From Gekko japonicus (Eukaryota), in the NCBI RefSeq assembly GCF_001447785.1, contig NW_015165238.1, positions 343,633-407,632 on the forward strand: a stretch of 64,000 nt of DNA, given 5' to 3'. The position numbers were made by a program, and so were the translations under genes. Shown here piece by piece: positions 11,794 to 43,100 of the stretch. A model generated the notes under the pieces. The model did not search any database. It was not told the DNA's origin and saw only the letters and a program-made list of their open reading frames with translations. Every line of letters begins with the position of its first letter. Positions within the stretch are counted from its first letter, which is position 1.

Positions 11794-12771
11794 ATGAATT
11801 CAGAAGAAGGAAACCAAACAAGCCCTACAGAATTCATCCTCCTAGACTTCAATATCAAAGATCTACAGATTCTACTTTTTATACTGTTCCTTCCTATCTA
11901 CCTTGTGACCATGGTGGGAAACATCCTCCTTGTTGTGCTTGTGTTCATTGATCAGCACCTTCACACCCCCATGTACTTCTTCCTGGGGAATTTGTCCTTC
12001 TTGGAGACCTGCTACAGCTCAACCATTATGCCGAGAATGCTGATCAGATTTCTAAGTGGGGATAAAGGCATTTCCATAGGTGGCTGCATTGCCCAAATGT
12101 ATTTCTTCGGGTTTCTTGCAACCACTGAATGTTATTTTCTTGCAGTAATGTCTTATGACCGTTATTTGGCAATATGCAGGCCGTTGCATTATGCAATGCT
12201 CATGAATGGAAGAATCTGCATCCTCTTGATTGCTGTTTCCTGGATATTTGGAGCACTGAAACTTGGTATTGTAATATTTTTGGTGTCTCGGTTGACTTTC
12301 TGTGGACCCAACAAAATTAATCATTTCTTCTGTGATTTCACCCCAGTGATAAGGCTCTCTTGTGATGACACCTATGTAGTTGAAATGACCCTCCTGATAT
12401 TCTCCTCCATAGGCACTCTGTTCCCACTGGTCATAATTGTCATATCTTATGTTAGCATCATTAAGAGTATATTGAGAATCCCATCCACTACTGGGAAACA
12501 AAAGGCCTTCTCCACTTGCTCTTCACACATCATTGTGGTGTCCTGTTTTTATGGGTCTTTGATGATAGTCTATGTCTTACCAAACACCAGCTCCCTGAGG
12601 GAGGTGAAGAAACTGTTCTCTCTGTTCTATACACTTCTCACCCCACTGGTCAATCCACTCATATATAGCTTGAGGAACAAAGAAGTAAAGGAAGCAATGC
12701 AGAAAAATTTCAAGATTCTTAGGTCCTTGCCACACGGCAGGGAAAACACCAGCCAAAGTGCGGCTAATTAG
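11794..12771 (+). CDS. Olfactory receptor, class II, intact 325 aa; last 16 aa come from a MITE
   Basis: LHTPMYFFL, MSYDRYLAIC, KAFSTCSSH, NPLIYSLRN; NQT sequon; acceptor ttctgtttcag 12 nt upstream of ATG. Confidence 0.97.
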   Translation: MNSEEGNQTSPTEFILLDFNIKDLQILLFILFLPIYLVTMVGNILLVVLVFIDQHLHTPMYFFLGNLSFLETCYSSTIMPRMLIRFLSGDKGISIGGCIAQMYFFGFLATTECYFLAVMSYDRYLAICRPLHYAMLMNGRICILLIAVSWIFGALKLGIVIFLVSRLTFCGPNKINHFFCDFTPVIRLSCDDTYVVEMTLLIFSSIGTLFPLVIIVISYVSIIKSILRIPSTTGKQKAFSTCSSHIIVVSCFYGSLMIVYVLPNTSSLREVKKLFSLFYTLLTPLVNPLIYSLRNKEVKEAMQKNFKILRSLPHGRENTSQSAAN

Positions 12772-28188: not shown

Positions 28189-30439
28189 TTGAAACCATGA
28201 TTTATTTATTTTATGCTGTTAATCAAAGTCTATTAGTTCTAGTTTCATCAATTTTCTGAGTACTATTATTCTTTCACTCCTAACTATGCATGGGGGGGGC
28301 AGGATTCAGTAATGTACTTTGTATGCAGAAAGACCTGGATTCAATTATTGACTCCCCCCATTAAAAAAGATATCAGCAGGCTGCAGGTTTAAACACAATA
28401 GTCTAATGGGGGTTTTCCCCCCGAAAACAATGTAGTCAAATGAACAAGATTTTTTTTTTTTTAACTGAAACAGAGAAAAAATATTTTTTCTCCCTGTGGC
28501 TGGTTACACCAAGGTCCACAACACTCCTGTCTGTTCTCGTTTGTTCTAGGGAAGTAGTGCTGACTGCACCTAGAAAAGGTAGTCTAGTTGGGCTTGCTGC
28601 TCTTCACTTGAACCAATTTCCCATGAACCGGATCCACCAGCAGAAGATGACAGTTCTCACAGCCACCAACAAGAGTCTCAGGGATCATGTTTGCTTGAGA
28701 GCTCCAGGACACTCTTGGCTGATTAAGCTGTCTTGTGGGTTGAAAGATCAAAGATGTTCGGACTAGATAGACCAGTGATCTGTCTCTCTAGAAGCAGTTT
28801 TATACGGACTTATCGTTTCATTGGATTGTGGGCAAAACTTTCAAATATGATACTTGATTTAACAACTGACAGTGCAATTTTCTCGGGAGTATGACCTAGG
28901 AGTAGAAGAAAGTGGGATTCTGAGTAGACCTACTTAGGATTGCACTGTAAATCTGGTAGATATTTTACGCTGGTATATTGTGGTTGTGTGCCTCTTCAAA
29001 GGCCAGCTATGGTAAGGAATTCAAGTTTGAAACACTTGGAAAAATTGATAACATTGAGGCTGTAATTTGATGGTCATTTAGAGGGTATTGAGATGGGAAC
29101 GGGCCTAAATTCTGAGTATAGGAGACTTGCATAGGGTTGTGCTGTAAATTTCAATTAATGCTGCATTTTTCAAAATGTAGAACTAGCTTTTCTTGTTTTA
29201 AGGTATTTTTACATTTGTGTCTGTGTGCGTGCATGTGTGTGCCCATGCCTGTAAGTCATGGTGACCCCTACTGGAACACAGAGATGGCTTGATAGCCTGT
29301 CTCTGGCCTCTTGGCCCTGGTATTCTTTTGAGATCTCCCATCCACGTACTTGCCAGGGTCGCCCCTGCTTAGCTTCTGAGATCTGACATGATAGGGCTTG
29401 CTTGAGCTATCCAGGCCAGGGATAGAACTAGATTTTCCACTAATGAAAAAGAGAGAAGAGACTTGCAAATGGCTGAGTATAGCAGAGTCTGGCTTTCACA
29501 GTTCATTGAAAAATAGGCAAGGTAATATTTCTAGGTATTTCAATGTGTACAACTGCTTTAGTGTTTTAAAAGTAATGTGATTAAACTGTAACAATGTAGT
29601 ACTCAATATTGGAATCAGAATTTCAGTTTTACTTCAGAGACCTCAAAGCCTGCACTTTCAGGATGCATTACTTAAAATCTAAAAAGTCTAAGGACTGCTT
29701 TGGAAGTCATGCAATGTACAATCCAATCCTATGCATATTTTCTCAAAAATATGTTAATGACTGTGATGGAACTTAAAGGAGACAGTAGCCTTGGATGTTC
29801 TATCAACTAATATCTGCTGAAAGTTCAAAATACAATACTTCTGTTTGACACATTCTGTTACACTCCATGTGGCTGAGAGATACTAGGAGGAAGCTTGGTC
29901 TGGTGACAGGGAGAAGGAACACTTTGGGATGTGGAGGTGATGAAGTTAGTGGCCCAGTGGCAAGAACTGTCTTGGAGGCCCAGATGGGACAAGGTCCCCT
30001 TAATAAGGAGAGTCTAACCCTATAGATCTTCTGTGGGGAATAGGTAGCTTGCAGCATCTGCAGCTGAGGGAGGGCAGGGAGAACCCTTTCGAGTACAAGG
30101 GATAAGAAGATTGGGAGAGGGCCTTGAGGGCAGGGCCAGATGTTAGGGTGATCATTAAAGGAGGTAGTCAAGCATAGCCTGGGGTAGATGGGGGAGGAGG
30201 AGTCAGGGGTTAAGATTTCCATTTGAGGGGAAGATGGTGCACAGCATGAACCACTGTGTAAACTCATGAATATACTGCAGATTGGACAGAACCTTCATGT
30301 CTTGGAGTTCTTTTGGCAATGGGGAGGAGGTTATGAAAACGTAGACAACTTGTTATGGGGCCCAATAGTGCAAGCATCCCATGAGGCCACAATGGCCACA
30401 TTAGCAACTACACTCCCTTTCAAATGCATAGTTCATATA

Positions 30440-32450
30440 GGGTGCGTTCAGACGCGGCCTTTCTGCCGGCATAAACTGCACCGGTTCCAACCGGTGCAGT
30501 TTATGCCAGCTGAAACGCGATCACACTCACCTCCATTCTCATTCACCAAAATACAGAAAGTGCAGATAATCAAACGCCAGGCTAAAACAGCGTGGGGGAG
30601 CTGATCCCTAGGCGGCTAAGCAAGGATCTCGACATGGGCGAAGGAAGGGGAAAATCAACAGGAGAGTAAAGAAAGACTCATCCAAGACGGAGTTTAAAAA
30701 CGTGGCCACAGAAATGGAGAGTTAAGGAAGCCTTACCTGTAATGTATTGGTAATGTATCTGTCCAGACCAGAGCAAGTAATTAAAGAGGACGTTTCCGAA
30801 CTGAGGAATGAGCTACAGAGGAAAGAAGCACTGATTCAGAAGCACTTGGGGAAGCTGCGACACTGGCACCAAGTTCTTGAAGACCTCAATGTGCAGCATA
30901 AAAAGCCGGCTGAAATGCCTCAAGGAGCTTTGGCTTACCTAGAGCAAGCTTCGGCAAATATCCCAGCACCTCTTAAGCAGACATGAACAAGCAAGCTCAT
31001 TCTACTTTTAGAACACCATCTCTACTTTTGAGACCAAGTGATGTGGGAACTTTTAAAAACCTTGTTGAAGTTGAAAAAGAAAGTAAATGAGAACACCCAC
31101 ACCCTCCCCTCCCCCCCTAGTAACAAGATGTTTAAACAAGCTGTAAACGTCAACATTGATGAATGCATGCAATAAAACTAGAATAACAAACTGTTAGCAA
31201 GAACCAAGTGCAGGATCCTTATGGAAGCTAGAAGTCACGTCTGGAGCTTTAAGCAAGTTTCCTTGTCAATGCAGTTCTGGCGATCTCTTGCTTAAGTGGG
31301 AAGACAGAAAACACCGAGGAAGTTAAAACAAACAACAAGCTAGTGAGAAGATGATTAACTGAAATGAGGAATGTTTTATAGATGGTTCCTTATCCTTCCA
31401 CTGAGGTGAGACCTAGTTTTTAAACTTTCAGCAATATTGCTAAGGTTGAAAATGCAATTTGTCATCTAGGGAGGGGGCTTCTTTTTGTGTGTATTCTATC
31501 TGGGAGGGGGGGAAATGAAACTGCAACTTGGGAGTGTAGACTGAAGACACTGCTGTTGGGGGTATTCAAAATAGTAATTGGAAGAACAGCAGCAAGCTTC
31601 CTTCTTAAATATTGCATGGGTGCCCTGGGAAACAGTAGTAAAAAGAAAGACTCAGCCACTGAAGGGATTGCTTCGTGCCTTGCTTTTCTGGCTGAAGTCA
31701 TGTCCTTTGGTTCCTGACAGCGCCGTGTCCTGAAGGGTCTCTTCAAGATAACCTCAGCTTCGTTGTTCAAAGTCACACAATGGAGAACCCAATAGGTAGC
31801 TAACCTGAACGGCACNNNNNNNNNNNNNNNNNNNNNNNNNNNNNNNNNNNNNNNNNNNNNNNNNNNNNNNNNNNNNNNNNNNNNNNNNNNNNNNNNNNNN
31901 NNNNNNNNNNNNNNNNNNNNNNNNNNNNNNNNNNNNNNNNNNNNNNNNNNNNNNNNNNNNNNNNNNNNNNNNNNNNNNNNNNNNNNNNNNNNNNNNNNNN
32001 NNNNNNNNNNNNNNNNNNNNNNNNNNNNNNNNNNNNNNNNNNNNNNNNNNNNNNNNNNNNNNNNNNNNNNNNNNNNNNNNNNNNNNNNNNNNNNNNNNNN
32101 NNNNNNNNNNNNNNNNNNNNNNNNNNNNNNNNNNNNNNNNNNNNNNNNNNNNNNNNNNNNNNNNNNNNNNNNNNNNNNNNNAAATAAAATGGCGGGGGAA
32201 AACCGGAAGCCTCAGGCTTCCCACGGAAATGCCTAGGCACCGGTGGAGAGCGATCAGACGCCGGTTTGCATCGGAAGCCACCGTTGCACCCTGTTTACCA
32301 CCACTTCCGACCTAGTGGCAGAGTGCAATGGTGTACAGCTCTTTACAACGGATAGAGAGGGAAGACAGATGTTCCCCGTCTGAACGCCGGTATGTACATC
32401 GATTGCAACTGGCACAGAATCCGTTGTAAAGGCTGCGTCTGAACGCACCC
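30440..32450. mobile_element. Non-autonomous PIF/Harbinger-like element carrying the MED28 fragment
   Basis: 23-bp TIR gggtgcgttcagacgc(g/a)gccttt; ATA TSD at 30437-39 and 32451-53; empty site gttcatataaacatac in copy A (~21187). Confidence 0.88.
30756..30986 (+). pseudogene. MED28: 5'-truncated MED28 (Mediator subunit 28) fragment, apparently processed; probable 3'UTR continues toward the gap at 31816
   Basis: [72 protein letters not shown] matches the vertebrate MED28 C-terminus; upstream tct gtc cag (SVQ) is out of frame by a 2-nt deletion. Confidence 0.93.
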
Positions 32451-32479
32451 ATAAACATACACACAGGATGCCTATCTGT

Positions 32480-32689
32480 TAGGGTTGTCAACTTCCAGCT
32501 GACAGTTGGAAATCTCCCACGATTGACCTCCAAGAAATAGGGATCAGATCACCTGAATAAAATGGCAACTTTGGAAGGTGGACTATATGGAATTATATCC
32601 CAGAAAAGTCCCCCCCCCGAAACCCCACCCTCCTCAGACTCCACCGCCCAAATATCCAGGTATTTCCCAACCTGGAACTGGCAACCCTA
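32480..32689. mobile_element. hAT MITE with TAGGGTTGCCA-type termini; related pieces at 35915-36430, 40400-40605, 43570-44070, 44935-45044, 52604-52795
   Basis: tagggttgtca...tggcaacccta; degenerate TSD ctatctgt/ctatccct; absent in unit A (~21220). Confidence 0.82.
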
Positions 32690-35600
32690 CTATCCCTCAA
32701 CCACAGTCACCCTCCATACAAAACAAGCATACCAATAATGCCTCCCCAGGTTTACCTGCAGATGTGCAATTGAAGGATGACAGAGCTTACTGTGACATTC
32801 TTCACCACAGCCCAGCCCAAGAGACACATGATGATGCCAAACCTTCCTAGGTATATAGTACAACAGCTTATACTTGGGCATGGGGGGGGCACTCATGGGG
32901 CTCTTGTTGAGGTCGCCAAAGGAAATGTTGGGTGGTTCCCTCATGGGCCACACCTGGCTACTAGCCTGGCCAAAGGGCAAAAAGGCAAAAGAAGGGAAGA
33001 ATAATTTTCTAAGCTCTGTGCCAATGGCTAGCCATGCATGCAAATACATCTCTGTTTTCAAGAGAAGTGTGAGGCTGCTCCCACTCTGACAGCACATTTT
33101 GGGACTCTGCTGTTCTATCCCTGCACTGAAGGAGCCTTCACAGGCCTCAGAATGGAAGGAGAGGGGATAGTATTTCCTGGTTCCTCCTCATCCGTGTTGT
33201 GCTCAGCCCTTGGTGCGCCACATGGGAGGCCAACACTTTCTTCTCTGGTCTCTTCCTAGAGCTACCATTCAAAGACAGCTAGGCCACCTTGCCCCATGCA
33301 GCCCACCTGTCTGACCCTGGCTCTTCCCTCCCCATGGGTGGAGATTGGGCCTCTTGGGCAGACCACACCCAGCTGCTCATCATCTTTTGCCCCCTGTTGG
33401 CTATCTTCACCTGGCTTTGGTGGGATGCCTTCTCAGCCACCTTGACCCTGACCCATCTAAGCCCTGCCCTCACCTGAGTCAGCCATTCTGCCAGTCCAGG
33501 CTTGATGATAAGGAGTTGCCACTGGCCTCTGGTCCTAAGTCGAGCAGCGCAGGGCTGGCCGGCCAGTTTGGGGCTTATTTGGGGGCAGCACGGCTCCAGA
33601 TCACCCAGAAGATCTGCTTGTTGAAGGATAGGTGGAAAAAATTATCTCTCTGTAACACCATTTATTTTATTTTATTGGAATCCATAGTTTAGCACATGCA
33701 CAACTGCATCCTCTAAATGACCTCTGCGTGTGATATCATTCAACACCATAACTTCTTATTAGTTTAGCACATGCACAACTGCATCCTCTAAATGACCTCT
33801 GCATGGGATATCAGTCAACACCATAACTTCTTATTTTTCTTATACTGTCACAAAGAATATATTTCCCTTTAGAAAATAATTGCATCTCTACTACATAATC
33901 TGCTCCTGGGAGAGTATAGGTATTTTAATTGCCCCATTGGCATAGGTCCCTAGGGAATCCCTTATATATATATATGAATGTGGGGAAATGAGAGCTAGTA
34001 CATACTGGTTCACTTATGGGACAACAGTACAGATACAAAGAAGGTATTGCTACATCTACCACATTGTATTTTATTATACAAAGAAAGGGTGACAGATGAT
34101 GGAACCACACAAGCCAAGCAGACTTCAATAACATTCACTGAATGTGAAGACAACCTATTGTGGGCCTTGTCCCAGTCATACCAATGATGCAGGTAATGCA
34201 GCTTACTTCTCTATTGGAAAGGAAAACAGTGGATCGGATCCTATTAGTTTTTTTCTGCTCAGTCTTACTACTATTCTGTACCTCCCATTCCATGGTGTAT
34301 GTGTGTGTCTTAGGACACTGATCATACTAGGTTTTTGTAGAATCGTCAAAGTACAATGACATAAATGTTCATAGTGGATGAGTTACCTGAAAGAAATGTA
34401 TGTATCTTTCTACATAATGAAGAACCTTGAGGGAATCATGGAAAATGTCAATGTTATCAACACTACTGCTTTCATCACTACACCCAGTTTCCTGTCTTGG
34501 CTTAGTTATCCGCTTCTGCAAACTCGGCAGGAGAGAGAGAGGAAAAACCTGTGGAAAATGAAGGTGGTATGAAACAATATGTATATATTTCTGGCTTGTA
34601 AAAGAGGGTTCTTTGAAACTAGGAGAATCTTTTGCAACATCCTAAACAGAATTAAACCTTTCCAAACCCATTAAAGTCATATGGACTTAGCAGGGTATAA
34701 CTCTGTTTAGGATTGCACTGTTAGAGAGTGATGCTTTGAAACTATTTCCTATCTGCCTGCCAGCATACCTCTATGTGCTCAACAAATACTCTACTAATAC
34801 TAAAGTTCATTGCAAGAGGGATCACAAATCTCCAAGATTTTATGCTGTTCAATGAATCTATGTCTGAATCTTTCTAGGGGATGGCAAGATGGCATTATTC
34901 ATTTTTGTAATTTAATATAGCTTTTGTTCAACACATTTATTTAGACAGTTTCTGCATCATATTATGTCTAGTGTATATATTTGACTTCCACATTATGTTG
35001 GCTTCTGAGAACTTGTGATCACCAAGGGCAAAAATCTTAATTCCATGTCCAGAGTTTTGATCACATCTCATTCTTAGGCCGAATTCAGACTGGCAGTTTG
35101 CAGTGCTATGGAGTCTGATCATATCTCATTCTTAATGTTTCCTGCTCTTCCCCCCTCATTCTACAATACAGTCTTGTACACCAAATATCAAACTGCTGAA
35201 ACATTTATGTAAAAGTAACCTTGAAGAATGTAAACAAAATCTGTTTTTTGCAAAAGTATTTATAGTAATATAAGATAAGCTATCATGCAGATTGCAAATA
35301 AAGCACACAATTACATTAAAAGACATAAAATTGCAAGTGGGACATAAACCCTGCTGAAGTACAATCCAGAGGGACTGATTCTATGAACAATCTTCTTTAT
35401 GCTGTAAGAACAGAAGAAAGCCTTCTCTTTAACAGCTAAGTTCTTTGGAGCATGAAGTTTTCTTCTTCTTTCCTCATGTTTTTAGAATTCCCAGTTTTAG
35501 TGAGTTCGGTAAATGTGCGGAAAGGAGAAAACTTTGGGTTTGTGCCTGGTGAACAAAAATCGACTGCAGAAAATCTCCCTATATAATAATTCTCTGTTGG

Positions 35601-40187: not shown

Positions 40188-43100
40188 TGTGGTAGACAGG
40201 GGAGGAGGAGTCAGGGGTTAAGATTTCAATTAGAGGGAAAGATGGTGCATAGCATAAACCACTGTGTAAGCTCATGAAAATTTATTTATTTATCAAATTC
40301 AGGGCTCTTTTTGAAGCAGGAACTCCTTTGCATATTAGGCAACATGTCCCTAATGTAGACACTCCTCCAAGAGCTTACACTTGCCCCTGTAAGAAGATTG
40401 TGGGAGATCTGCGAGCTGGAGATCTCCCACAATTACAATTGACCTCCAGGAAGCAGGGATCAGTTCACCTGGATAAAATGACCACTTTGGAAGGTGGACT
40501 ATATGGAATTATACCCCCCGGAAAGTCCTTACCCAAACCCCACCCTCCTCAGACTCCACCGCCCATATATCCAGGTATTTCTCAACCCAAAGCTGGCAAG
40601 CCCTACAAAACCTCAGTCACCCTCCATACAAAAGAAGCATACCAATAATGCCTCCCTGGGTTTACCTGCAGATGTGCAACTGAAGGTTGGCAGAGTTTAC
40701 TTTGACATTCTTCACCACAGCCCAGCCCAGGAGACAGATGATGATGATGATGCCAAATCTTCCTAGATATTCAGTAGAACAGCTCATACTTGGGCATGGG
40801 GGGGCAATCATGGGACTCTTCTTGAGGTGGGCAAAGGAGATGTTGGGTGGTTCCCACATGGGCGACACATGGTTCTGTGTTTTCTAGAGAAATGTGAGGC
40901 TGCTCCCACTCTGACAGCCCATTTTAGGACTCTTCTGTTCTGTCCCTGCACCGAAGGAGGCTTCACAGGCCTCAGAACGGGAGGAGGGGGATAGTATTTC
41001 CTGGTTGCGCCTCATCCGTGTTGTGCTCAGCCCTTGGTGTTCCACACGGGAGGCCAACACTTTCCTCTCTGGTCTCTTCCTGGAGCTACCATTCAAAGAC
41101 AGCTAGGCCACCTTGCCCCATGCAGTCCACCTGTCTGACCCTGGCTCTTCTCTCCCCCCGGGTGGAGATTGGTCTTTTTGGGCAGACCACACCCAGCTGC
41201 TCATCATCTTTTGCCCCCTGTTGGCTGTCTTCCCCTGGCTTTGGTGGGATGCCTTCTCAGCCACCTTGACCCTGACCCATCTAAGCCCTGCCCTCCCCTG
41301 AGCCAGCCATTCTGCCAGTCCAGGCTTGATGATAAGGAGTTGCCACTGGCCTCTGGTCCTGGGCTGAGCAGCACAGGGCTGGCCAGCCAGTTTGGGGCTT
41401 ATTTGGGGGGCAGCACTGCTCCAGATCACCCAGAAGATCTGCTTGTTGATTGGCTAGGTGGAAAAAAATTATCTCTCTGTAACACCATTTATTTATTTAT
41501 TTTTTGGAATCAATAGTTTAGCACAGGCACAATCACTCCTTAACATGACCTCTGCATAGGATATCAGTCAACACCATAACTTATTAGCTTGCTTATACTG
41601 TCACAAAGAATATATTTCCCTTTAGAAAATAATTGCATCTCTACTACATAATCTGCTCCTGGGAGAGTATAGGTATTTTAATTGCCCCATTGGCATAGGT
41701 CCCTAGGGAATCCCTTATATATATATATGAATGTGGGGAAATGAGAGCTAGTACATACTGGTTCACTTATGGGACAACAGTACAGATACAAAGAAGGTAT
41801 TGCTACATCTACCACATTGTATTTTATTATACAAAGAAAGGGTGACAGATGATGGAACCACACAAGCCAAGCAGACTTCAATAACATTCACTGAATGTGA
41901 AGACAACCTATTGTGGGCCTTGTCCCAGTCATACCAATGATGCAGGTAATGCAGCTTACTTCTCTATTGGAAAGGAAAACAGTGGATCGGATCCTATTAG
42001 GTTTTTTTCTGCTCAGTCTTACTACTATTCTGTACCTCCAATTCCATGGTGTATGTGTGTGTCTTAGGACACTGATCATACTAGGTTTTTGTAGAATCGT
42101 CAAAGTACAATGACATAAATGTTCATAGTGGATGAGTTACCTGAAAGAAATGTATGTATTGCTTCAAGGTTCTCATCACTACACCCAGTTTCCTGTCTTG
42201 GCTTAGTTTCCCCCTTCTGCAAACTCGACAGGACAGAGAGAGGGAAAACCGGTGGAAAATGAAGGTGCTATGAAACAATATGTATATAATTCTGGCTTGT
42301 AAAAGAGGGTTCTTTTATACTAGGAGATTCTTTTGCAACATCCTAAACAGAATTAAACGTTTCCAAACCCATTAAAGTCATATGGACTTAGCAGGGTATA
42401 ACACTGTTTAGGATTGCACGGAGAGTGATGCTTCGAAACTATTTCCTACCTGCCTGCCAGCATACCTCTATGTGCTCAACAAATACTCTACTAAAACTAA
42501 AGTTCATTGCAAGAGGGATCACAAATCTCCACGATTTTATGCTGTTCAATGAATCTATGTCTGAATCTTTCTAGGGGTTGGCAAGATGACATTATTCATT
42601 TTTGCAATTTAATATAGCTTTTGTTCAACACATTTATTTAGACAGTTTCTGCATCATATTATAGCTGTCTAGTGTATATATTAGACTTCCACATTATGTT
42701 GGCTTCTGAGAACTTGTGATCACAAGGAACACAAAGAGCAAAAATCTTAATTCCATGTACAGAGTTCTGATCATATCTCATTCTTAATGTTTCCTGCTCT
42801 TCCCCCCTCATTCTACAATACAGTCTTGTACACCAAATATTAAACTGCTGATACATTTATGCAAAAGTAACCTTGAAGAATGTAAACAAAATCTGTTATT
42901 GCAAAAATATTTATAGTAATATAGGATAAGCTATCATGCAGATTGCAAATAAAGCACGCAATTACATTAAAAGACATAAAATTGCAAGTGGGATATAAAC
43001 CTTGCTGAAGTACAATCCAGAGGGACTGATTCTATGAATAATCTTCTTTATGATGTAAGAACAGAAGAAAGCCTTCTCTTTAACAGCTAAGTTCTTTGGA

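What the first reader, a model, noticed from the sequence alone, without database searches (positions are those of the whole stretch)
30440..32450. Harbinger-like DNA transposon carrying an apparently spliced MED28 fragment (Pack-type element with RNA-derived cargo)
Seen: a 23-bp TIR pair, ATA TSD and an empty site in paralogous unit A define a ~2-kb insertion. It contains the MED28 C-terminal ~73 codons and probable 3'UTR, with no transposase in the sequenced part. Recalled knowledge: human MED28 has an intron between ...EQVIKE and DVSEL..., yet here these are contiguous (aaagag|gacgtt), which implies an mRNA-derived piece. Inference: either the element captured a cDNA/retrocopy and moved it, or a retrocopy landed inside a resident MITE. 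Pack-type elements are known (Pack-MULEs, some animal cases), but a spliced cargo in a reptile Harbinger is unusual. A short gtaatgtat duplication marks the left cargo junction.
Basis: partly seen in the sequence, partly recalled or inferred. Interest (0 to 1): 0.85.

Follow-up and report, generated by a model that had tools for sequence, protein, structure and literature searches.

The report
Gecko transposon carrying spliced MED28 fragment
A 2-kb cut-and-paste jumping gene in a gecko genome carries an intron-less, so RNA-derived, piece of the host gene MED28; it stands in roughly ten copies and is missing at this exact spot in other individuals, so it moved recently, which is rare in vertebrates but probably has no function.

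Summary
30440-32450 is bounded by 23-nt inverted repeats (22/23) and an ATA duplication. The empty site is seen in the paralogous unit (about 21190). It is also seen at this same locus in assembled contigs of two other individuals, which join 30436 to 32451 without a mismatch.

The interior encodes the last 73 residues of MED28 (Pfam Med28, 1.6e-12; 70/72 identical to Paroedura picta MED28). More than a dozen gene models, from fish to mammals and including a snake, lose homology exactly before DVSEL. That places a conserved intron where the cargo is continuous (30788|30789), so the cargo is spliced.

New here: raw DNA reads and contig depths put the cargo at about 8-15 copies, and 8 of 10 reads cross the left junction. 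RNA reads come almost entirely from a distinct parent gene.

The Harbinger assignment rests only on the 3-bp duplication and the shape of the ends. How the cargo was acquired is open, because its 3' end lies in the 366-N gap.

The closest precedent is retrogenes carried by bat Helitrons. The main animal Pack-TIR survey discarded intron-less captures by design. The scan earlier noted a similar DHX38-carrying element elsewhere in this genome.

The parts
30437..30439 (.). Left copy of the 3-bp target site duplication (ATA)
   Evidence: Joint 30436->32451 with 3 shared letters in X1/X2 contigs.
30440..30462 (+). Left terminal inverted repeat
   Evidence: I2: 23 nt, 96%.
30440..30540 (+). High-copy left arm: TIR plus an internal palindrome (30457-30518). 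It resembles a ~96-bp mini-MITE form seen in X1/X2 contigs (30440-30517 + G + 32434-32450).
   Evidence: depth about 1080x in 30405-30505 but only about 18x at 30545; table 5c. (I1).
30541..30757 (.). Left internal segment of unknown origin, at the same low copy number as the cargo
   Evidence: 14-18x in X22 against 1-4x for the flanks. All other DNA and RNA reads differ from this copy at 30579, 30580 and 30632, and nearly all at 30634.
30739..30758 (+). 9-bp microduplication gtaatgtat-tg-gtaatgtat abutting the cargo's 5' junction
30758..30788 (+). Tail of MED28 exon 3 (SVQKPEQVIKE). This copy lacks 2 bases (AA after 30766) that most other copies have.
   Evidence: table 4: +AA in 8 of 10 DNA reads.
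30789..30986 (+). MED28 exon 4 coding part (DVSEL...KQT plus stop), joined to exon 3 without the intron
   Evidence: Intron position.
30987..31065 (+). Proximal MED28 3'UTR
   Evidence: RNA depth, and X2 contig 12 contiguous with the end of the coding sequence.
31066..31421 (.). 356-bp segment that the parent lacks: an X2 DNA contig and 3 RNA reads have 30 other letters here. It is shared by most cargo copies (about 6-10x); origin unknown.
   Evidence: joint 31065->31422, table 5c. X1 contig 5 is a single-copy, 91%-identical relative of 31214-31414.
31422..31815 (+). Distal MED28 3'UTR, running into the gap. Beyond about 31515 it stands in only about 1-3 copies.
   Evidence: X2 contig 12, X1 contig 6, RNA depth 4-9x, DNA depth 3-5x.
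31816..32181 (.). Assembly gap (366 N, length estimated); hides the cargo's 3' end
32182..32450 (+). High-copy right arm with internal TIR-like motifs at 32246-32261 and 32374-32387
   Evidence: 290-470x.
32428..32450 (-). Right terminal inverted repeat
32451..32453 (.). Right copy of the target site duplication (ATA)

Best explanation
A non-autonomous cut-and-paste DNA transposon, most likely PIF/Harbinger-like, lies between two olfactory-receptor genes of a gecko. Its interior carries a 5'-truncated, intron-less copy of the last 84 codons and 3'UTR of MED28, so the cargo passed through a spliced mRNA at some step.

The composite is moved in trans by a transposase that recognises the 23-nt ends. 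It has spread to roughly 8-15 copies, which fall into at least two sequence sub-lineages and include shorter, internally deleted forms. It inserted here, or excised precisely in others, so recently that the site is still polymorphic.

Shown: the ends, the TSD, the empty allele, MED28 identity, the multi-copy state with a shared left junction, and a distinct expressed parent.

Inferred: the intron in this species' own MED28, the superfamily, and the route of acquisition. The most likely route is that a LINE-made MED28 retrocopy was inserted into, or copied by repair into, a resident element. No function is expected; the MED28 tail is probably a passenger.
For: Ends, TSD and paralogous empty site.

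Empty allele at the same locus in X1 and X2: 0 mismatches, depth 78 and 64.7, about that of neighbouring single-copy contigs (tables 5 and 8).

Cargo identity: Pfam Med28 1.6e-12; 70/72 identical to Paroedura picta MED28, including the HWHQ/EDL residues that, among the MED28 proteins read here, only that gecko protein has.

Intron: P0015, P0016, P0019, P0022, P0024, P0031-33, P0035, P0037, P0040, P0242, P0244 and P0248 diverge right before D(V/I/L)SEL, after a Q or K and residues typical of a translated pyrimidine tract. P0023 reads through the retained intron (...EQVEKE|VGF...FDMQ|DISEL). P0018 and P0246 skip exons onto DVSEL.

Copy number: X22 raw DNA gives 10-18x over 30607-31111 against 1-4x for the flanks. 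Contig depth is 598/78 in X1 and 786/65 in X2.

Shared junction: 8 of 10 reads span 30766 with +AA, and they can only be laid that way if they also fit the left internal segment (table 4).

Distinct parent: RNA has T at 30869 in 29/30 reads against 0/11 DNA reads. RNA lacks the GATTCA insertion (0/17) that 8/13 DNA reads carry.

X2 contig 11 starts at 30787, the point where a parental intron ending in ...ag would merge with the copies. Depth rises there from 674 to 786. This is weak support.
Against: No read was shown to link the flank, the 100-bp high-copy arm and the cargo at this locus, and the gap is unbridged. The interior therefore rests on the assembly.

The TSD ATA is not the TWA recalled for many PIF/Harbinger families, and no autonomous partner was found or could be searched for.

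Other copies were seen only as read depth and short contigs. Their TIRs and TSDs were not seen.

No cargo-like ORF from geckos turned up in the protein database.
Confidence: 0.78

Rival explanations
1. Simple nested retrocopy. A MED28 mRNA was retroposed into this one resident MITE copy, and the composite never moved.
For: The cargo is 5'-truncated and intron-less, as LINE-made retrocopies are. Its 3' end, where a poly(A) tail and retro-TSD would lie, is hidden in the gap.
Against: The whole 2,011-bp insert, cargo included, is absent from the empty allele, which shows a single ATA. The cargo therefore arrived with the element. The cargo and its left junction stand in about 8-15 copies.
Confidence: 0.03
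2. DNA-level capture. Geckos lost MED28 intron 3, and the element copied a plain genomic piece of the gene.
For: The gecko parental locus was not read. The cargo starts inside exon 3, and DNA capture allows any start point.
Against: The intron position is conserved from teleosts to mammals, birds, turtle-like models and a snake-like model. Intron loss is rare in vertebrates (general knowledge). An X2 contig breaks at 30787 with a rise in depth of about one gene copy, as expected where a parental intron joins.
Confidence: 0.05
3. Assembly chimera. The locus holds an ordinary short MITE of this family, and the assembler threaded in the cargo-bearing interior of another copy through the 100-bp arm that is repeated about 1000 times.
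For: The arms stand at hundreds to a thousand copies. The scaffold has an unbridged gap of estimated size inside the element. No listed read links flank, arm and cargo.
Against: The left contig runs unbroken from unique flank through the arm into 1.3 kb of interior. This copy's private letters (30579/80, 30632/34, 30878, 30927, the missing AA) appear in no X1 or X2 contig, and those individuals also carry the empty site. That point is weak, because contigs drop rare variants. Even if this rival were true, a cargo-bearing multi-copy family would still exist.
Confidence: 0.08
4. The extra copies are dispersed MED28 retrocopies or segmental duplicates. They are not transposon copies, so this element did not amplify its cargo.
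For: The TIRs and TSDs of the other copies were not seen. The window itself is a tandemly duplicated region.
Against: The non-MED28 left internal segment has the same depth as the cargo, and reads cross their junction. Independent retrocopies would not share that junction. Only one of the tandem units in the window carries the element.
Confidence: 0.06

Closest known systems
Retrogenes carried and amplified by Helitrons in vespertilionid bats (Thomas et al. 2014, PMC4224331)
   Same: A DNA transposon propagates an intron-less, 5'-truncated host gene fragment (exons plus 3'UTR) to tens of copies. That paper distinguishes both routes: retroposition into the element and capture of an existing retrogene. 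Empty sites were used as proof.
   Different: Those are rolling-circle Helitrons in a mammal. This is a cut-and-paste TIR element with a 3-bp TSD in a gecko, and the insertion is still polymorphic.
Pack-TIRs of animals (Tan et al. 2021, PMC8277862) and Pack-MULE / Pack-CACTA of plants
   Same: A non-autonomous TIR element whose interior is replaced by host gene fragments. It is multi-copy by transposition, shows microhomology or a duplication at the capture junction, and has a mosaic interior.
   Different: Classical Pack elements copy genomic DNA with its introns. The animal survey explicitly discarded intron-less captures of multi-exon parents, so this kind would have been filtered out.
PIF/Harbinger MITEs (Tourist-like)
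   Same: 3-bp TSD, an AT-rich target, short TIRs, subterminal repeats of the TIR motif, and very high copy number of short forms.
   Different: No link to a transposase or Myb-like gene pair was shown. The TSD ATA is not the TWA recalled for many families.
DHX38-carrying non-autonomous transposon noted earlier in this genome (scan finding s1-821532)
   Same: Same genome and the same kind of event: a host gene fragment amplified inside a small TIR element.
   Different: Different cargo and size. Nothing is on record about splicing of that cargo, and whether it is the same TIR family is unknown.

Membership tests
PIF/Harbinger superfamily (non-autonomous member) | 3-bp target site duplication | tested here: met
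   ATA on both sides and single in two kinds of empty site. The 3-bp TSD for PIF/Harbinger is stated in PMC4122938.
PIF/Harbinger superfamily (non-autonomous member) | Terminal inverted repeats of the usual kind (about 25-50 bp) | tested here: inconclusive
   The TIR is 23 nt (22/23), just under the range quoted in PMC9179366. The resemblance of the GGG...GTT start to PIF ends is from memory only.
PIF/Harbinger superfamily (non-autonomous member) | Target preference TWA / AT-rich | tested here: inconclusive
   One site only: ATA, within catATAaac. It is AT-rich but not TWA.
PIF/Harbinger superfamily (non-autonomous member) | Ends shared with an autonomous element encoding a DDE transposase and a Myb-like protein | not testable with these tools
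   No search of this genome was available. There is none in the window.
Pack-type TIR element (transduplication) | TIRs and TSD enclosing host gene sequence, with no transposase | tested here: met
   The gap of about 366 nt is too short for a transposase gene.
Pack-type TIR element (transduplication) | A separate parental gene exists elsewhere | tested here: met
   The RNA and one DNA contig carry parent-specific letters: T at 30869, no GATTCA, and 30 nt in place of 31066-31421.
Pack-type TIR element (transduplication) | Cargo moved with the element (several copies, empty site) | tested here: met
   About 8-15 copies by depth, junction-crossing reads, and an empty allele at this locus. The TIRs and TSDs of the other copies were not seen.
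Processed (LINE-mediated) retrocopy | Introns of the parent are missing | tested here: met
   The exon 3/exon 4 junction is continuous at 30788|30789. The intron is conserved across vertebrates. It was not read in this species.
Processed (LINE-mediated) retrocopy | Poly(A) tail and a flanking direct repeat of 7-20 bp | not testable with these tools
   The 3' end lies in the N gap, which was not to be filled. The 9-bp repeat at the 5' junction is tandem, not flanking.
MED28 (Mediator subunit 28) | Match to the family profile | tested here: met
   Pfam PF11594, 48.2 bits against a cut-off of 29. Only the C-terminal part of the profile is matched (positions 65-102 of 102).

The most novel reading that the evidence does not exclude
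The family took up MED28 sequence directly from mRNA or cDNA while the double-strand break left by its own excision was being repaired (RNA- or cDNA-templated gap filling). On this reading the gecko holds a currently active cut-and-paste transposon that repeatedly shuttles RNA-derived gene pieces. That route for making new gene copies in vertebrates is one that surveys have filtered out by design.
Probability: 0.12. Interest if true: 0.8.

Novelty: new variant of a known kind. Interest (0 to 1): 0.6.

Why it matters
Gene fragments carried by cut-and-paste transposons are well known in plants but poorly documented in vertebrates. The one large animal survey removed intron-less captures on purpose, so RNA-derived cargo in TIR elements is essentially uncounted.

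This case combines three things: retroposition, DNA transposition and very recent mobility (a presence/absence polymorphism). That makes the gecko a candidate vertebrate in which DNA-transposon activity and transposon-mediated gene shuffling could be studied in living populations.

In itself the MED28 tail is most likely a passenger without function.

Tried and rejected
The parental intron could therefore not be read in any gecko.
- A protein search with the 79-aa cargo ORF found no gecko cargo-like ORFs, only MED28 genes and fragments of other vertebrates.
- The search of earlier findings by sequence gave nothing.
- Rfam gave only a sub-threshold miRNA-like hit on the arm's palindrome (27 bits against a gathering score of 86). 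I take it as chance, or as a MITE hairpin.
- The other ORFs inside the element have no Pfam match.
- A second intron near ...QKH|L..., suggested by hits that start at query residue 25, was rejected. Those models simply start at an internal Met.
- A TA target duplication (Tc1/mariner-like) also fits the empty site, but it would make the ends asymmetric by one base. I rejected it in favour of ATA.
- A composite of two MITEs flanking host DNA remains possible. The left arm resembles a mini-MITE with a decayed inner end, and the right arm has TIR-like motifs at 32246 and 32374. This could not be separated from ordinary subterminal repeats.
- The gap was neither filled nor looked up.

Full report
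**What is there.**
- The stretch 30440-32450 is bounded by inverted repeats of 23 nt (22 of 23 complementary).
- The 16-nt tip occurs exactly only at these two places in the window. Even with up to 3 mismatches allowed, only 0.06 matches are expected by chance.
- ATA stands directly outside both ends.
- The window is a tandem array of olfactory-receptor units about 9.2-9.5 kb long.
- In the preceding unit the homologous site reads ...agttcatataaacatac.... That is unit B with the element and one ATA removed.

**The gap, tested first.**
- No listed read or contig bridges 31816-32181 (table 8), so continuity through the gap is not shown directly.
- Contigs of two other individuals of the same species label (X1, X2) join 30436 straight to 32451. 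They skip 2014 letters, which is the 2,011-bp element plus one ATA. Three letters fit both sides, and there is no mismatch over 272 and 195 nt of flank. Depth is 78 and 64.7, about that of neighbouring single-copy contigs, which lie at 76-92 (tables 5 and 8).
- The two flanks are therefore true neighbours. The left contig (flank, TIR, cargo) and the right contig (arm, TIR, flank) must be the two sides of one insertion.
- What lies in the gap, and its true length, stay unknown. I neither filled it nor looked it up.
- No ORF of interest crosses the gap, so reading frame does not matter.

**The same result shows a polymorphism.** The element is present in the reference and absent in two other animals. 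This is either the state before insertion or a precise excision. Either way the element moved recently.

**The cargo.**
- 30759-30983 translates to [15 protein letters not shown]...APLKQT followed by a stop.
- It matches Pfam Med28 at 1.6e-12.
- It is 70/72 identical to MED28 of the gecko Paroedura picta. This fits the earlier scan note that the genome is a gecko's.

The intron position is nevertheless well supported by many independent gene models returned by the protein searches.
- In P0015, P0016 (snake-like), P0019, P0022, P0024, P0031-33, P0035, P0037, P0040, P0242, P0244 and P0248, homology to MED28 stops exactly before D(V/I/L)SEL. That residue is preceded by a Q (a K in P0040) and by F/L/S/P-rich residues, which is what a translated pyrimidine tract plus ...cag acceptor looks like.
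- P0023 reads through the retained intron (...EQVEKE|VGFLL...FDMQ|DISEL).
- P0018 and P0246 are exon-skipping forms that join an upstream exon directly to DVSEL (alignment A1).
- The same models place the two other introns at SSFE|ACFASLV and IRTG|VDQC.
- Exon 4 therefore begins at DVSEL from fish to mammals, including squamates.
- In the window, ...attaaagag|gacgtttcc... is continuous at 30788|30789. The last 11 codons of exon 3 are fused to exon 4.
- A weak second line of evidence: in X2 a contig starts exactly at 30787. That is where a parental intron ending in ...ag would merge with the copies, and depth rises there from 674 to 786, about one gene copy.
- I put the chance that the cargo is RNA-derived at about 0.9.

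**Is the cargo only here?** No.
- In raw DNA reads (X22, about 1x per copy), the flanks have depth 1-4. The interior has 18, 14, 12, 13 and 10 over 30607-31111, then 6-10 up to about 31515, then 3-5 beyond.
- The arms have about 400-1080 (left, only to about 30540) and 290-470 (right) (table 2).
- Contig depths agree: 598 against 78 in X1 and 786 against 65 in X2, which is about 8-12 copies.
- Eight of ten reads across 30766 carry two extra A's. They can only be laid that way if they also fit the non-MED28 segment to the left. The junction between that segment and MED28 is therefore shared by most copies.
- Those two A's restore ...SVQKPEQ..., so this window's copy has a private 2-bp deletion.
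- Eight of 13 DNA reads carry a GATTCA duplication after 30832 that this copy lacks. There are thus at least two sub-lineages.
- The fall in depth along the 3'UTR suggests that most copies are shorter, internally deleted forms.

**The parent is separate and expressed.**
- RNA reads (X21) cover the coding part at about 34x.
- They have T at 30869 in 29 of 30 reads, against 0 of 11 DNA reads.
- They never carry GATTCA (0/17).
- They rarely carry the A at 30879 (3/50) that 6 of 9 DNA reads have.
- Nearly all MED28 RNA therefore comes from a parent gene distinct from the copies. The copies contribute only a few per cent (tables 3 and 4).

**A complication in the 3'UTR.**
- An X2 DNA contig and three RNA reads go from 31065 through 30 other letters to 31422.
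- The parent's 3'UTR therefore lacks 31066-31421. That 356-bp piece is nonetheless shared by most copies (6-10x).
- Part of it has a single-copy relative at 91% identity that continues into unrelated sequence (X1 contig 5).
- The interior is thus a mosaic: 217 bp of unknown origin, spliced MED28, 356 bp of unknown origin, then more MED28 3'UTR.
- A 9-bp tandem microduplication sits at the left junction. Mosaic interiors and junction duplications are usual in Pack-type elements.

**What kind of element.**
- No ORF in the sequenced part resembles a transposase, and the gap is too short to hold one. The element is non-autonomous.
- A 3-bp TSD in an AT-rich target, short TIRs, repeats of the TIR motif inside the right arm (32250, 32376), and very abundant short forms all fit PIF/Harbinger (PMC4122938; PMC9179366). 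One such short form is a 96-bp mini-MITE seen in table 5c.
- ATA is not the TWA I recall for many families, and no autonomous partner could be sought. I rate the Harbinger assignment at about 0.65.

**How the cargo got in.** This is open. The 5' truncation fits LINE-made retrocopies. The poly(A) tail and flanking repeat that would prove nesting would lie in the gap. Three routes remain: a retrocopy inserted into a resident element, a pre-existing retrocopy copied in during repair, or direct cDNA-templated repair.

**Comparison with what is known.**
- Bat Helitrons carry and amplify retrogenes by both of the first two routes. Its authors called this the first such report for any DNA transposon (PMC4224331).
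- The survey of Pack-TIRs in 100 animal genomes found 370 cases, but it discarded intron-less captures of multi-exon parents by design (PMC8277862).
- This finding is therefore a new variant of a known kind: spliced cargo in a cut-and-paste element of a reptile that is still polymorphic.
- The scan had earlier followed up a DHX38-carrying element of the same general kind elsewhere in this genome.

**Limits.**
- The other copies were seen only as depth and short contigs.
- The link from flank through arm to cargo at this locus rests on the assembly.
- Copy numbers are rough.
- The read tables were truncated (227 differences and 1031 loose ends were not shown).

Noticed in passing
window 11794-46031: Tandem array of at least five olfactory-receptor genes (ORFs at 11794, 17975, 27187, 36662 and 45033; 325-334 aa; Pfam 7tm_4 about 1e-51 for the two that were scanned). 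The units are about 9.2-9.5 kb long and 85-100% identical in places. The element lies about 2.2 kb downstream of the third gene.
   Followed up: partly
window 32519-32690: A very high-copy short repeat, SINE-like, directly beside the element. Depth is about 1,500-7,400x in raw DNA reads and it is abundant in RNA. It is present in the empty allele too, so it is older than the insertion. It is absent from paralogous unit A.
   Followed up: partly
window 30753-30986: The private 2-bp deletion of this copy (AA after 30766) puts an ATG at 30753 in frame with the MED28 tail. This gives a 77-aa ORF (MYLSRPEQ...KQT) that the majority copies would not have. No RNA read carries this copy's private letters.
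   Followed up: partly
window 31066-31421: A 356-bp segment inside the cargo that the parental MED28 3'UTR lacks (30 other letters stand there). Most copies share it. A single-copy relative at 91% identity continues into unrelated DNA (X1 contig 5). It may be a second captured fragment.
   Followed up: partly
window 30440-30517 + 32434-32450: Contigs of other individuals show a mini-MITE form of the family of about 96 bp (left arm joined to the right TIR through one G). This form probably accounts for most of the ~1000x depth of the left arm. The arm's palindrome gives a sub-threshold Rfam mir-3136 hit (27 bits against 86).
   Followed up: partly
window 40279-40434: In the following tandem unit, the site homologous to the insertion point is replaced by about 157 bp of unrelated sequence. 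That unit is therefore uninformative as an empty site.
   Followed up: no
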